DNA of 64,000 bases from positions 103,686 through 167,685 of the forward strand of contig NW_003314410.1 in NCBI RefSeq assembly GCF_000143415.4, read 5' to 3'. The translations under genes and the position numbers were made by a program. Shown here piece by piece: positions 53,480 to 60,229 of this stretch. The notes under the pieces are model-generated. The model searched no databases. It was not told where the DNA came from and was given only the letters and a program-made list of their open reading frames with translations. The stretch is from Selaginella moellendorffii. Lineage: Eukaryota > Plantae > Lycopodiophyta. Each line of letters opens with the position of its first letter. Positions within the stretch are counted from its first letter, which is position 1.

Positions 53480-54450
53480 GGCTGGGTGTTGCGATCCTTG
53501 TTGGGTCGCCTCGTGCGCCGACCGTCAGGAGCAGCAGCACTCTCCGCGAAGAGGATCCCAGCTCCAGGAAGCGACAGGAGACGGAGATTGTGAAGCCCTC
53601 GATTCACGCCTCGTCCAGCGCTCCAAACCCACGTCAAGCCGGCTAGATTCTGGAGGGCGCAGAGGAGCGGACAGCAGGTTTTCTTAGATTTGTTTTCCTT
53701 TTGTTCTTTTGATCGTGTGATTGTTTGATTCTTATTTCCTCTGTTTGACAGTTGTGCGCGGCCGGAGCTTTCAAATGCGTCACGGCTTCGTATTATCGTC
53801 TTTCCATTCATCCTCTCGTACACAATGCTCCATTTGGTCTCCCTGATCATGTGAACCAAGCACTCTTAATCACGGTTTGTCTTGTGGATCATAGCGTATA
53901 GACTGTGGTGATGGATGATCCTTGCGTTTTTCGCCTAGGTCCGGGGACTTGATGGCTAGCTATCTCTTTGTTGCGGCCAGCAGCCTCGCGAAGCTCTTGA
54001 CTCAATCGCCATCAGAAGTTTCCAAGAGGCTTTGCATGAAAGTTTTCACTTGCATGTTTTATAGCGGGATTTGTTTTGTCATGACCATAAAACACGTCTT
54101 TCACTGCCGAGGCAACCTGATTTTTGCTCGTTCCTGCGCCTTTACGAGAATTGGTAGCATTCATTTCCTCGACTTGGTTGATTGATGATCGTCCCAAGTG
54201 ACAAATGTTCCCCAAAGCGTCTTACTGCTTGAAGGATGTTCCCTCCTTAGAAGAAGGTAACGAAGAAGAACAATCCTCACCAGAAGCATTTCTCGAGTGA
54301 GTCACGTCATTCTTTTCTCTCGTTCGTAAGAATTGGCATTTCAACAGTGATATCTTATGGCACGTATGCCTGTAAGAATCCAGAAGAAGCAAAACCTTTT
54401 AACGAGCTCGCAGGGATTTGATAGGGCTGCACCCAAGCCGACTAAACAAT
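53480..54450 (+). pseudogene. Decayed inverted copy of the DUF3082-like and cytochrome c6A genes
   Basis: Reverse complement of 56760-58060 with deletions; mirror of 15770-16680. Confidence 0.85.
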
Positions 54451-55269: not shown

Positions 55270-55850
55270 TCACGTTGTGTACATGGGATACTTCATCCTG
55301 CTAGTCACTGCTGGTGCCACCATGTTGACAACTGGATTTGATTGATCAGGTGGTTGTTGCTACTGCTGAGGTAGTGGTGAACTTTGACAAGGTCCCCACT
55401 CTTCCTCCTTTGGCTGCTTTTCTGTTTTCCTTCGTAAGACAACTTCTACAGCCTTTTCTGCTTGTTCTTGTCATCATCTCTGGCTACGCATGCATAAGCT
55501 ACTGCTCTGTGGCTGAAGTCTGGTCTTCTTCCCTCAGCTTCACTCCTTGTGAATGAAACCAGGAATCCCAGGTTTGACACTCCAAGAGATCTCAGTGGGG
55601 CCCCTGGAAAAGACCAGACCTGGTATAGCGTTTTTCCAGAGATTATTCAAGAAAAAGAGGATATTCGAAAGAGTCTGGTCGAAGTAGAAATTCCTTTGTC
55701 AGACGGTTTCCAAGCTCTCAAAGTTTAATCCATTTGAAGACACACTCACAAGCAAAAGTTGTGTTCGAGGAGGCAGTGGCAGGTGCTGCGACACCGGTGT
55801 TTGATCACGTGTGCCTTGTCCGAGAGCCCTGGCTAAACATCAAGGCCGTG
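55270..55850 (+). repeat. Direct duplicate of 44640-45210
   Basis: acgttgtgtacatgggatacttcatcctgctagtc...gagccctggctaaacatcaaggccgt is present at both sites. Confidence 0.9.
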
Positions 55851-56130
55851 AAGAACCGTGCTGTGTTCAAGGAAGACTGTGGGATGTTTAAGAAAATCAT
55901 ACACCATAATCCACAAGTAAAGATCTTTTTCTCGGAGTCATCGCCCTGTCGATTTCACAAAGTCCATGTCTCGGACAAGACGGAGAAGCGTGCTTGAATC
56001 GGCCGTTTAAGTACTACAACTTGGGTGTGAGTAAGTCTCGCTCGATTCACGTAATCTTTGGTGTTAAATCTCGTATCGATCCATCACATGGCGCTGTGCT
56101 TGCCCGAGTTTGCAAACACTCGAAGAAGAA
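55770..56130 (+). pseudogene. Spermidine synthase 3' fragments
   Basis: Remnants of EAVA..., CLVREPWLNIKAVKN and RPFKYYN with intron sequence, inverted relative to the intact SPDS gene. Confidence 0.75.
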
Positions 56131-56684
56131 AGTGGACTGTTTGAAAAAGAGGCTTAAAGCTTTGAAGACAGCACAGGTATTTTGGATTCATCAAGAACGT
56201 TGTCAGCTTTTCTTTCTCTTCCTCCACGCAAATGGATGCTCCTATTGTGGCGGCGCCATCGTATCAATTTTGTACTTCAATAAAGTCCATGCATTCATAA
56301 ACATTACAAAATCCACTCACACAATTGTAACGAAGGCATGCTGACTCCTGAGGGTGACGTCGTTGCAAATTTACCTGGAATAGATCATTCACTGTCTGTT
56401 ATAGAAAATTTGATTTGCAGCAATTGAGCATTCAAAACCAAAAACTAAATAAGCATTCAAAATCAGATCATGCCTTTGTATTGGATGATGAGAATTGGCT
56501 TATCTATCTATCTATTTTATAAGCAAAACCGTCATAGGAAGACAGAATAATTTTTTTCTACAACCACCTCCTCTCAGATCGAAGGCCTGCACTGATGCCA
56601 ATGCATGAGGGATATCTCACCCTGGACATTCCTGGTGAGTTGTATCACTTCAAACTCCACACCATCCCACAATTATACTATTGA

Positions 56685-57253
56685 TCAATCCAACCGTGGC
56701 CAGCCTTGATCGGCTTGGGATTTCACAAACTCAGCAAGAGCTTGAATATCTTGGTCACTAAGTCGGCTTGCGAATGTACATTGGCCTTGAGGTTTGCAGC
56801 CCTCTCCAAATCCCTGCGAGCTTGTTAGCTGAGGTTAAAAGGCTTCTCTGCTTCTATCGAATGGCTTCTTACAGGCATGCGTCCTTTGCCATAGTACGTG
56901 ATTTTGACGATATCTTCCACTGTTGAGATGCCATTCCTGCGAATGAGAGAAAAGAATGACGAGAGTCACGCGAGAAATGCTTTTCCTACCGTTGGAGATC
57001 GTCCGCTCCAAGTGTGGCTCCCTGAAAGAAAAGTTCCCGTGAGTTTCAGATGGTCGTGCAAAGCGTCTTACTGCTTGAAGAATGTTCCCTCCTCGAGCAT
57101 GGCAACCAATACATGATCTCTGGAACGTCTCAGCGCCTGTGCTAGCATCCGATTCTCCCACTAGAAGAAGATAAATCAGCCAAGTTGAGTAGAGAGAATG
57201 AATGTGTTACCAGAATTCGTAAAGGCGCAGGAAAGAGCAAAGACCAAAGCCAT
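56685..57253 (-). CDS. PETJ: Chloroplast cytochrome c6A, at least 5 exons
   Basis: Exons 57253-57211, 57160-57072, 57021-56990, 56936-56873 and 56813-56685 give GAETFQRSCIGCHARGGNILQAGATL...NGISTVEDIVKITYYGKGRMPGFGEGCKPQGQCTFASRLSDQDIQALAEFVKSQADQGWP. This has CXXCH and the c6A loop insertion with two Cys. The true 5' end is uncertain. Confidence 0.92.
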
Positions 57254-57417
57254 AGCGAAAGACCTGTTCGATGGTCATGGCAAAACAAATCCCGCTAGAA
57301 AGCATGCAGCATGAGAACGAGTAAAAACTTTCATGCAAAGCCGGGTTGGCTACTGTACATGAGCCCAAATATATACATACGCGCTTGTACTATACCTTGC
57401 GTGAGAATCCACAAAGT

Positions 57418-58059
57418 TTACCTCTTGGAAACGTCTGCTGACGATTGAGTCAAGAGCTTCGCCGAGAGGAGAGCTAACCCGACGCTGCTGGCCGCAAACA
57501 AAGAGATGGCCAGCCATCCAAGTCCCAGTACCTTGGCGAGAAAAGCAGGGATCATCCATCACCAAAGTCTATATGATCACAAGATCATACCGTAGTTGCC
57601 AGTGCTTGGTTCACATCGTCAGTGAGACCAAATGGAGCATTGTGTACGAGAGGATGAGTGGAAAGATGATCATACGAAGCCGTGACGCCTTTGAAAGCTC
57701 CGGCCGCGCACAGTGCTCCTAGAACCGAGCCTGTGATACTCTGTCACATAATCAAAAGAACAAATCTTAACAGGAGATGGCTATCGATCGTGTGTTACCT
57801 GCTGTGGAGTGGGCTTCTTGTAGGATTTGCCCCATCCCCTCTGCGGCCTCCAGAATCTAGCCGGCTTGACGTGGGGTTGGATGAGCTTGGGATTGAGGAG
57901 CTCGGCGCTGGAGGGGGCGTAGGGAATGCGATCGAAGCGCGGCCGCGAGGGCTCCACAATCTCCATCTCCTGTCGCTTCCTGGAGCTGGAATCCTCCTCG
58001 CGGAGAGTGCTGCTGCTCCTCACGGTCGGCGCACGAGGCGACCCAACAAGGATCGCCAT
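57418..58059 (-). CDS. DUF3082-like plastid membrane protein, 3 exons
   Basis: Exons 58059-57799, 57740-57591 and 57531-57418. Transit-like N-terminus, KKPTPQQSITGSVLGALCAAGAFK...HPL and TTVLGLGWLAISLFAASSVGLALLSAKLL (two hydrophobic helices, DUF3082-like pattern recalled from memory). Confidence 0.7.
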
Positions 58060-58758
58060 CAAAGCCCTAAAATGGATGATATTTTTTGGCCTCTTTGTTT
58101 TTCTTTCTTGAGTCGATCGTTCTAGCTGCAGCCCTGCATTCTCTGCCTTTGCAACTTCCAGGGGGGCGTGAGATTCGCATATGGAAGTTCCGAAGAGCCC
58201 GGGGGCGATGCGGCTGGGAGGAGCGTAACTCGGCTAAGTCTCGCGATCCAGCAAATCAAGAAGATGAAGAAAGACAAGAGTGGTGTAAGCACTGAAAGGG
58301 CCGTGTTTGGAAAGTTCTAGCTCGAGGCTTTAAGCTTTGAAGATAGCACTAGAAACATATAACTGCCACTTCGTCCCAATGCCCCCATCTCCCATTACAC
58401 AAAATTTTTGACGTGCACCGCCTTGGATTATGAATCAACGTCATAGTTTTCAAAGCATAGGAACACTTTCAACATTTGCTCACTTTCCATGGCATCACAA
58501 CCACAGGAATGGATTTAGTGCGGCATCTGATTTACAAATAATACACCATAATCAGCAAGTAAGAAAGTTTAGCTCAAGGTTTTCCTGCAAATACAAACTT
58601 ATAAATTCCAGACCCAGTACAGTAATGGTGAATTCTGTTGCTTGTGACATGGGACGAAGTGGTCCATGCTTTGATTGAGCGCATGGATCAATCCCAGTTA
58701 CATGTTTATAGGCCTGTCTTCCAAACTTCGATAACTCTTTCTCCATACCTGGGTACCT

Positions 58759-60229
<1,471 letters not shown>

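What the first reader, a model, noticed from the sequence alone, without database searches (positions are those of the whole stretch)
56685..58059. Possible spliced DUF3082-cytochrome c6A fusion (polyprotein) from a single locus
The c6A frame has an in-frame stop just upstream of its only nearby ATG (57253), so on its own it would have a thylakoid-signal-like stretch (MALVFALSCAFTNSVG) but no stromal transit peptide. It starts only 164 bp after the DUF3082-like stop. That stop is embedded in a good splice donor (AAGAG|GTAAAC, intron start 57421), and an acceptor AACAG| at 57264 joins it exactly in frame: ...DVSKR-SFAMALVFALSCAFTNSVG-ESDAST...CIGCH. Splicing this 158-nt intron would give transit peptide + two-helix DUF3082 + lumen signal + c6A, while intron retention gives DUF3082 alone. 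c6A function is unresolved, so a fusion would be a Rosetta-stone clue linking two poorly understood plastid proteins.
Basis: partly seen in the sequence, partly recalled or inferred. Interest (0 to 1): 0.75.

Follow-up and report, generated by a model that had tools for sequence, protein, structure and literature searches.

The report
Spikemoss DUF3082–cytochrome c6A fusion gene
In the spikemoss Selaginella moellendorffii, cytochrome c6A has lost its own targeting exons and is made as the tail of a small chloroplast membrane protein (DUF3082) when one 158-base intron is spliced out; the gene model is already public but nobody has commented on it.

Summary
All features are on the minus strand.

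- **Two reading frames.** A three-exon DUF3082 frame (58059-57418) is followed 164 nt later by a five-exon cytochrome c6A frame (57253-56685). The c6A frame has no transit peptide of its own.
- **RNA evidence.** Contigs from four studies remove all six ordinary introns. Three runs keep the 158-nt segment 57421-57264 in one contig that spans both frames. One run carries contig ends that join 57422 to 57263, exactly as predicted.
- **Public model.** The eight window exons reproduce, residue for residue, a 295-aa Selaginella moellendorffii protein (EFJ05808.1 / XP_002993168.1 / UniProt D8TC40). Its allele scores above Pfam's cut-off for DUF3082 and for a cytochrome c domain.
- **Origin.** The c6A part keeps the four ancestral c6A introns and all key residues. 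It is as conserved as other land-plant c6A.
- **Range.** Marchantia and Sphagnum show neither fusion nor adjacency. None of 18 other long c6A representatives has DUF3082.

So this is a real, already annotated, lineage-restricted fusion that has not been discussed in print. It most likely arose when c6A captured the upstream gene as its targeting part. The Rosetta-stone reading is untested and weak. This scan had not noted it before.

The parts
57799..58059 (-). Exon 1, codons 1-87. Ser/Thr/Arg-rich N-terminus (putative stromal transit peptide) plus a basic pre-domain region. The start of the DUF3082 match (residue 83) lies at its end.
   Evidence: Translation; identical to P0257 residues 1-87; composition. 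RNA contigs cover it only up to 58054, so the start codon is not confirmed.
57741..57798 (-). Intron 1, 58 nt, GT..AG, always removed.
   Evidence: Joint 57740|57799 in all four runs; splice sites.
57591..57740 (-). Exon 2, codons 88-137. First (weakly hydrophobic) DUF3082 helix and loop.
   Evidence: Pfam DUF3082 covers residues 83-163 of the allelic protein P0001.
57532..57590 (-). Intron 2, 59 nt, GT..AG, removed.
   Evidence: Joint in all four runs.
57422..57531 (-). Exon 3 up to the alternative donor. Second DUF3082 helix and basic tail, ending in the first two bases of Arg174.
   Evidence: this exon alone hits Pfam DUF3082 at E 0.01; hydropathy.
57264..57421 (-). Alternative 158-nt GT..AG intron. 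Its first bases, G|TAA, contain the DUF3082 stop codon (57420-57418). When retained, the frame ends after 174 codons. When removed, it runs on into c6A.
   Evidence: Retained in contigs of X1, X4, X7 and X3. Contig ends in X3 show it removed, joining 57422 to 57263. It differs between haplotypes by 2 substitutions and a 4-nt indel, while the splice sites are identical. It holds six ATGs. It is three times longer than the other introns and has the weakest pyrimidine tract.
57211..57263 (-). Exon 4. Third base of Arg174, then a 14-residue hydrophobic stretch and a small-residue motif. This is the remnant of the c6A lumen-targeting signal. It contains the stand-alone ATG 57253.
   Evidence: It aligns with the hydrophobic signal region of canonical c6A precursors. 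Strongest 13-residue hydropathy peak, 175-189.
57072..57160 (-). Exon 5. Start of mature c6A with the CxxCH heme-binding motif (Cys208, Cys211, His212).
   Evidence: flanking introns removed in all runs.
56990..57021 (-). Exon 6 of the fusion (c6A exon 3).
   Evidence: the intron position is shared with Marchantia and Sphagnum c6A.
56873..56936 (-). Exon 7, ending in the axial Met ligand motif (Met252).
56685..56813 (-). Exon 8. The c6A-specific loop with Cys259 and Cys265, the C-terminal helix, and stop TGA 56687-56685.
   Evidence: (100% match to residues 254-295 of P0001).
56483..56684 (-). 3' untranslated region, at least about 200 nt.
   Evidence: Contig X1 record 1 reaches 56483 and X3 reaches 56536. 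Contigs cannot show the true end.
53488..54440 (+). Decayed inverted duplicate of the whole unit (promoter-proximal flank, DUF3082 part, spacer, c6A part). Not part of the working gene, but it shows the two halves were duplicated together.
   Evidence: Both ATGs are lost, several deletions are present, 77 nt including the donor and stop are missing, the acceptor AG is changed to AC, and the heme exon is scrambled.

Best explanation
This is one transcription unit of Selaginella moellendorffii (RefSeq LOC9652664; allele LOC9653921). It encodes a 295-aa precursor made of an N-terminal targeting region, a two-helix DUF3082 membrane domain, a short hydrophobic signal segment, and a complete cytochrome c6A.

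Shown: a 158-nt GT..AG intron whose donor overlaps the DUF3082 stop codon is alternatively removed. With the intron retained, which is the form that assemblers keep in most runs, translation ends after 174 codons and gives DUF3082 alone. With the intron removed, the frame continues into c6A.

Inferred origin: an ordinary c6A gene, whose four internal introns are still in place, lost its 5' transit-peptide exon or exons. It came to depend on read-through from the upstream DUF3082 gene plus this splice.

Inferred mechanism:
- The N-terminus takes the precursor into the stroma.
- The DUF3082 hairpin inserts into the thylakoid membrane with both ends on the stromal side.
- The basic tail plus the following hydrophobic segment act as a Sec-type signal that carries the c6A domain into the lumen.
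- Heme is attached there, and the thylakoid processing peptidase probably cuts near residue 193, releasing soluble c6A.
- The splicing ratio would set a low c6A dose relative to DUF3082.
For: - **RNA.** All six ordinary introns are removed in four runs from four studies. One 1034-nt contig (X4) runs from 56658 to 58020 with 57211-57528 continuous. X3 contig ends read across 57263|57422; one is a 17-mer unique in the window and the other a 9-mer.
- **Public models.** Eight window exons plus three split codons equal P0257 (EFJ05808.1 / XP_002993168.1 / D8TC40). All six models of both haplotypes carry the junction.
- **Domains.** Pfam on P0001: DUF3082 scores 30.8 bits against a cut-off of 25, covering profile positions 1-79 of 80; Cytochrome_CBB3 scores 42.5 bits.
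- **The c6A half.** Best solved structures are 2dge/2ce0/2v07 at E 1e-42, against 4e-13 for ordinary c6. CxxCH, the Met ligand and both loop cysteines are kept. It is 66-71% identical to other land-plant c6A, and those share 62-81% with each other.
- **No stand-alone c6A start.** There is an in-frame TGA upstream and six ATGs in the 164-nt spacer.
- **Ancestry.** The c6A intron positions are shared with Marchantia and Sphagnum. Exon 4 aligns with their signal hydrophobic region.
- **Haplotypes.** Splice sites are identical between haplotypes, and the intron carries a 4-nt indel that also appears in the RNA contigs.
Against: - The spliced form is seen only as two short contig ends in one of four runs. 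The retained form dominates the assemblies, so the fusion mRNA may be minor. Contigs cannot give ratios, starts or ends.
- No contig reaches ATG 58059. One ends at 58054 followed by adapter sequence, so translation may start at Met32, whose N-terminus looks less like a transit peptide.
- The first DUF3082 helix is only weakly hydrophobic.
- There is no protein-level evidence for import, topology, heme attachment or cleavage.
- The retained-intron mRNA has a stop far upstream of four exon junctions. It could be a nuclear or decay-prone species rather than a template for DUF3082.
Confidence: 0.7

Rival explanations
1. The fusion protein is made but not cleaved. On this reading c6A stays tethered to the thylakoid membrane by three hydrophobic segments, as a membrane-anchored cytochrome.
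For: The hydrophobic segment 175-189 is the strongest 13-residue hydropathy peak. Its c-region lacks a classic Ala-x-Ala motif. Nothing here shows cleavage.
Against: The segment aligns with the cleavable signal of canonical precursors. The start of the Arabidopsis crystallised protein aligns to about residue 193, right after a small-residue motif. c6A is described as soluble in other species (PMC5526843).
Confidence: 0.17
2. These are two neighbouring genes, and the spliced chimera is a rare read-through by-product without function. On this reading c6A is expressed in another way, for example from a start inside the spacer or by reinitiation at ATG 57253.
For: The retained form dominates contigs in X1, X4 and X7. 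The genome is compact, so read-through is easy. The fusion is seen in no other taxon.
Against: From ATG 57253 the product has no stromal targeting part and no charged n-region. Six ATGs lie in the spacer. The c6A domain is under normal constraint, so it must reach the lumen somehow. No other junction into exon 4 appeared. Both haplotypes keep the splice sites.
Confidence: 0.09
3. The c6A half is a relic on its way to loss, carried along in the 3' part of a DUF3082 mRNA.
For: Loss of the transit-peptide exons. Two changes occur at positions invariant in eight other sequences, R262Q and G268A.
Against: The frame is intact across five exons. All ligand and disulfide residues are kept. Identity to other plants is in the normal range. 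There are no differences between haplotypes in the last three exons. The truly decayed copy 2 shows what loss looks like here.
Confidence: 0.04

Closest known systems
Canonical cytochrome c6A precursors of land plants (Arabidopsis At5g45040; Marchantia OAE21714.1; Sphagnum KAH8935707.1)
   Same: The mature domain has CxxCH, the Met ligand and the 12-residue loop with two cysteines. The four intron positions are the same, and a hydrophobic lumen signal lies directly before the mature part.
   Different: The canonical precursors are 170-240 aa with their own N-terminal stromal transit peptide and no DUF3082. Here the 5' exons are gone and an entire DUF3082 protein takes their place.
Stand-alone DUF3082 (PF11282) proteins of cyanobacteria and plastid-bearing eukaryotes
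   Same: Full-length match to the Pfam model above its cut-off. The intron-retained mRNA encodes a 174-aa protein that ends 11 residues after the domain. Atlas clusters of eukaryotic DUF3082 proteins are 162-263 aa.
   Different: Sequence searches found no relative outside S. moellendorffii, so it is a divergent member. No other member seen here carries a cytochrome.
Conjoined genes, also called transcription-induced chimeras (read-through plus splicing from the upstream gene into exon 2 of the downstream gene; described mainly in animals; cited from my own knowledge)
   Same: A donor at the end of the upstream coding region joins to an internal acceptor of the downstream gene, and the downstream first exon is bypassed.
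   Different: Here the downstream gene no longer has a usable first exon, so the chimera appears to be its only targeted form. Both haplotypes and a decayed duplicate share the arrangement.
Plastid-targeted polyprotein precursors of Euglena and dinoflagellates (cited from my own knowledge)
   Same: One imported precursor would yield more than one mature plastid protein.
   Different: Those precursors join repeats of the same or related proteins by short linkers. Here two unrelated proteins are joined through a signal-peptide-like segment, and cleavage is not shown.

Membership tests
Cytochrome c6A | CxxCH heme-binding motif and axial Met | tested here: met
   Cys208, Cys211, His212 and Met252 sit in invariant columns of a nine-sequence alignment.
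Cytochrome c6A | 12-residue loop insertion with two cysteines, which sets c6A apart from c6 | tested here: met
   Cys259 and Cys265 are invariant. The alignment to the 105-residue chains 2dge/2ce0/2v07 is ungapped at E 1e-42, against E 4e-13 or weaker for ordinary c6 chains. That these three entries are Arabidopsis c6A is from my own knowledge.
Cytochrome c6A | Gene structure shared with other c6A genes | tested here: met
   The four intron positions coincide with Marchantia and Sphagnum.
Cytochrome c6A | Own two-part presequence (stromal transit peptide plus lumen signal) | tested here: not met
   Only the hydrophobic core of the lumen signal remains. An in-frame stop lies eight codons upstream of ATG 57253. 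The missing part is supplied by the DUF3082 exons.
Cytochrome c6A | Lumenal location with covalently bound heme | not testable with these tools
   Needs fractionation, heme staining or mass spectrometry.
DUF3082 (PF11282) | Match to the Pfam model above its gathering score over the full model | tested here: met
   P0001 scores 30.8 bits against a cut-off of 25, residues 83-163 on profile positions 1-79 of 80. The last exon alone gives E 0.01. The top three Atlas look-alike clusters are all PF11282 (score 0.80, a lead only).
DUF3082 (PF11282) | Two membrane helices | tested here: inconclusive
   The second helix (about 136-164) is clear. The first (about 88-106) stays below the hydropathy threshold used.
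DUF3082 (PF11282) | Recognisable sequence relatives in other organisms | tested here: not met
   The word search of residues 40-180 found only S. moellendorffii proteins. The cut-out piece found none. The bacterial and archaeal genome scan found none. All three methods have low sensitivity.
Alternatively spliced fusion (conjoined) transcript | RNA molecules that carry the junction, and RNA molecules that retain the segment | tested here: met
   Junction ends appear in X3. Retained contigs appear in X1, X3, X4 and X7, with all the other introns removed. The 17-mer is unique in the window.
Plastid polyprotein precursor | Proteolytic separation of the modules after import | not testable with these tools
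   The only support is that the signal-like segment aligns with cleavable c6A signals.

The most novel reading that the evidence does not exclude
The fusion is more than a borrowed targeting device. DUF3082 would be the thylakoid-membrane partner of c6A, for example the membrane end of a lumenal thiol or redox relay. Selaginella would have fixed in one polypeptide a partnership that is non-covalent elsewhere, and regulated retention of the 158-nt intron would tune the ratio of the two. At the least, the fusion would then fix the topology of DUF3082 proteins: thylakoid membrane, C-terminus on the stromal side.
Probability: 0.12. Interest if true: 0.75.

Novelty: new variant of a known kind. Interest (0 to 1): 0.45.

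Why it matters
[quoted passage not shown] A 2026 preprint links it to fluctuating light and notes no strongly bound partners. DUF3082 is an uncharacterised family; only two papers in the library mention it, both with a single occurrence.

A natural fusion gives cheap, testable ideas:
- DUF3082 is a thylakoid protein with a stromal C-terminus.
- DUF3082 mutants might share c6A phenotypes.

It is also a clean plant example of a gene that lost its transit-peptide exons and survives by splicing onto its upstream neighbour, with intron retention deciding between one product and two.

The value is limited for three reasons. The gene model has been public since the 2010-2011 genome annotation. The fusion is seen in one species only. 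Its neighbours in bryophytes are unrelated genes.

Tried and rejected
- **Exon-wise Pfam scans.** They were too weak to name the upstream gene. The public full-length allele settled it.
- **Searches for DUF3082 relatives.** The word search of residues 40-180 found only this species. The cut-out piece found nothing. The genome-contig scan found nothing. So I could not compare DUF3082 gene structure in other plants, and I could not test whether cyanobacterial DUF3082 genes sit next to c6-family genes.
- **Look-ups that failed.** The paper search for the accession numbers timed out. The look-up of encoding contigs had no record for P0257 or P0032.
- **Scan of no bearing.** The bacterial-type promoter and terminator scan of the spacer found nothing and has no bearing on a plant gene.
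- **Readings considered and rejected.**
  - A stand-alone c6A starting at ATG 57253 or by reinitiation: it would have no targeting part, and six ATGs lie upstream.
  - Genomic DNA or pre-mRNA as the source of the retained form: the same contigs lack the six other introns.
  - Transcripts of copy 2 as the source of the junction: copy 2 lacks the 17-mer.
  - The open frame through the spacer of copy 2 as evidence for an ancestral continuous exon: about 35 codons in an otherwise wrecked copy can be chance.
- I did not build or search a joined model from the window. Exons were searched by reference, and the joined protein used was the public one that the search returned.

Full report
**Anatomy.** Everything lies on the minus strand.
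- The upstream frame has three exons: 58059-57799 (87 codons), 57740-57591 (50 codons) and 57531-57421. It ends at TAA 57420-57418.
- The downstream frame is a five-exon cytochrome c6A: 57263 (or ATG 57253)-57211, 57160-57072, 57021-56990, 56936-56873 and 56813-56688, with TGA at 56687-56685.
- The c6A frame has a TGA eight codons upstream of its only ATG. The 164-nt spacer holds six further ATGs, each opening a short frame.
- The upstream stop sits inside a good donor, gag|GTAAAC, with the intron starting at 57421. An acceptor AACAG| ends the intron at 57264. The intron is 158 nt, and the split codon AG+G reads Arg.

**RNA.** One search for runs and one lay-down were allowed.
- The runs that hold the stretch hold about half of its sampled words, as expected for exons only.
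- In four runs from four studies, all six ordinary introns (50-59 nt, GT..AG) are cleanly removed, so these are RNA-derived contigs.
- In X1, X4 and X7 a single contig runs unbroken through 57211-57528. The 158-nt segment is retained while every other intron is gone. The X4 contig (1034 nt) spans 56658-58020, covering both reading frames.
- In X3 the graph branches at both intron borders. One contig that lies from 57420 onward is preceded by 17 letters that match 57245-57261, a string unique in the window. Another contig that lies up to 57265 is followed by 9 letters that match 57424-57432. Allowing for the two-base ambiguity at each side, both read 57263 joined to 57422. That is the predicted junction.
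- Contigs cannot give ratios, starts or ends, and they drop minor variants. What can be said is that the retained form is at least as abundant as the spliced form in every run, and that the spliced form exists.

**Public gene model.**
The last c6A exon alone, run against the representative library, gave as best hit a 295-aa protein matching at its residues 254-295.
- That cluster holds six Selaginella moellendorffii models from two loci, which are the two haplotypes: EFJ05808.1 / XP_002993168.1 / UniProt D8TC40 (295 aa), XP_002964138.2 (295 aa), EFJ34471.1 / D8QZU8 (264 aa, starting at Met32), and RefSeq isoforms of 300 and 273 aa that differ only at the last acceptor. Every one carries the junction.
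- Each of the eight window exons and each of the three split codons is identical to P0257.
- I did not build or search a joined model of my own. The joined protein used from then on is the public one.

**Identity of the two halves.**
- On the full allele, Pfam gives DUF3082 at 30.8 bits (cut-off 25) over residues 83-163 and profile positions 1-79 of 80. It gives Cytochrome_CBB3 at 42.5 bits.
- Language-model look-alikes of residues 66-178 are three PF11282 clusters (a lead only).
- The C-terminal 110 residues hit the 105-residue chains 2dge, 2ce0 and 2v07 at E about 1e-42, against 4e-13 for ordinary c6. From my own knowledge these three chains are Arabidopsis c6A.
- CxxCH, the Met ligand and the two loop cysteines are in invariant columns.
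- The mature domain is 66-71% identical to eight other land-plant c6A. Those share 62-81% with each other, so it is under ordinary constraint.

**Origin.**
- Marchantia and Sphagnum c6A genes have introns at the same four places as the Selaginella c6A part: after the signal hydrophobic region, after the ILQ(P/A) motif, inside the Arg before NG, and after GRMP. They also have further 5' exons that encode a transit peptide.
- Selaginella exon 4 aligns with the hydrophobic core of their lumen signal.
- Their neighbours within 10 kb are unrelated genes, with no DUF3082.
- None of 18 c6A representatives longer than 200 aa has DUF3082. No large Atlas cluster combines the two families.
- The simplest history is that a normal c6A gene landed behind, or lost the region between itself and, a DUF3082 gene. 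It then lost its own 5' exons and is now reached by read-through plus a splice from a donor built on the upstream stop codon.

**Within-species comparison.**
- The other haplotype (GL377569.1) has identical splice sites. Its 158-nt segment differs by two substitutions and a 4-nt indel. This is non-coding behaviour, and the same indel is seen in the X3 and X7 contigs, so both alleles are transcribed with the intron retained.
- The last three c6A exons are identical between haplotypes. All four substitutions in exon 1 lie upstream of Met32.
- The window also holds a decayed inverted duplicate of the whole unit at about 53488-54440. The two halves were already together when it was copied.

**Mechanism.**
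- Shown: one locus and two RNA forms that differ by one intron whose retention places a stop after DUF3082.
- Inferred:
  - The fusion is the only form that can deliver c6A to the lumen. The stand-alone frame lacks a stromal targeting part and an n-region.
  - The DUF3082 hairpin puts its basic tail (Lys/Arg-rich, residues 162-174) on the stromal side.
  - The following 14-residue hydrophobic segment acts as a Sec-type signal. There is no twin arginine, as expected for a c-type cytochrome that receives heme in the lumen (PMC5526843).
  - Cleavage near residue 193 would free soluble c6A. This position corresponds to the start of the crystallised Arabidopsis protein.
  - Inefficient removal of this intron would keep c6A rare relative to DUF3082. 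The intron is three times longer than its neighbours and has the poorest pyrimidine tract. Low c6A would fit its reported very low abundance.

**Caveats.**
- The spliced form rests on two short contig ends in one run, plus the public models.
- No contig reaches ATG 58059. One X1 contig ends at 58054 and runs into adapter sequence, and an A/T-rich motif lies about 25-30 nt upstream. The mRNA may therefore start at or just beside the annotated ATG, with translation from Met32.
- There is no protein evidence of any kind.
- The retained form could be a nuclear or decay-prone species.

**Literature.**
- 'DUF3082' occurs in two unrelated papers, once in each.
- Of 19 papers naming cytochrome c6A, the two I searched for the word 'fusion' do not contain it.
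- Slater et al. 2021 (PMC8358224) use EFJ34471.1, which is the fused model, as the S. moellendorffii c6A. They trim it to start inside the hydrophobic segment, and the word 'fusion' does not occur in their text.
- The object is thus public and has even been used, but the fusion itself seems unremarked.

**Rosetta-stone reading.** It remains possible but weak. The fusion is seen in a single species with a compact genome. There is no adjacency in two bryophytes. DUF3082 look-alike clusters come from haptophytes and diatoms, and diatoms are reported to lack c6A. A more robust by-product is topological: if c6A must reach the lumen, DUF3082 must sit in the thylakoid membrane with its C-terminus in the stroma.

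**Verdict.** This is a real, lineage-restricted variant of the c6A precursor that is already in the databases. It is of moderate interest.

Noticed in passing
window 53488-54440 (+ strand): Decayed inverted duplicate of the whole DUF3082-c6A unit, including its promoter-proximal flank. Both ATGs are lost, several deletions are present, 77 nt of the alternative intron (donor and stop) are missing, the acceptor AG is changed to AC, and the heme exon is scrambled. On the other haplotype RefSeq models it as LOC112344425 (P0252, 255 aa, no Pfam domain).
   Followed up: partly
window 55756-56032 (+ strand) and 58920-59282 (- strand): A second, nested inverted repeat. The 3' part of the spermidine synthase gene that lies upstream of the fusion gene has a diverged partial copy (74-94% over short arms) on the other side of the locus. 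The intact neighbour is annotated as spermine/spermidine synthase on the other haplotype (L003 3776-5246).
   Followed up: partly
window 58054-58090 (- strand): No RNA contig in four runs reaches the annotated ATG at 58059. The furthest (X1) stops at 58054 and continues into Illumina adapter sequence, as happens at a fixed molecule end. An A/T-rich motif lies about 25-30 nt upstream and is conserved in the decayed copy. The start codon (Met1 or Met32) is therefore open.
   Followed up: partly
window 57966-58059 (- strand): All four substitutions between the two haplotypes in exon 1 fall in the 31 codons upstream of Met32, and at least three change the residue. The remaining 56 codons of the exon are identical. 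This fits either a fast-evolving transit peptide or an untranslated leader.
   Followed up: no
window 56814-56872 (- strand): RefSeq lists two further acceptors for the last intron, giving a 300-aa isoform (five extra residues before the c6A loop) and a frameshifted 273-aa isoform without the c6A C-terminus. The contigs of the four runs show only the 56813 acceptor.
   Followed up: partly
proteins P0053 (Nepenthes gracilis, 260 aa) and P0113 (274 aa): Other unusually long c6A models carry unrelated additions. One has an N-terminal stretch resembling a light-harvesting or one-helix-protein motif. The other has a C-terminal squalene epoxidase fragment. These are probably annotation merges with neighbours. 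They show that a long c6A model is not in itself evidence for a real fusion.
   Followed up: no
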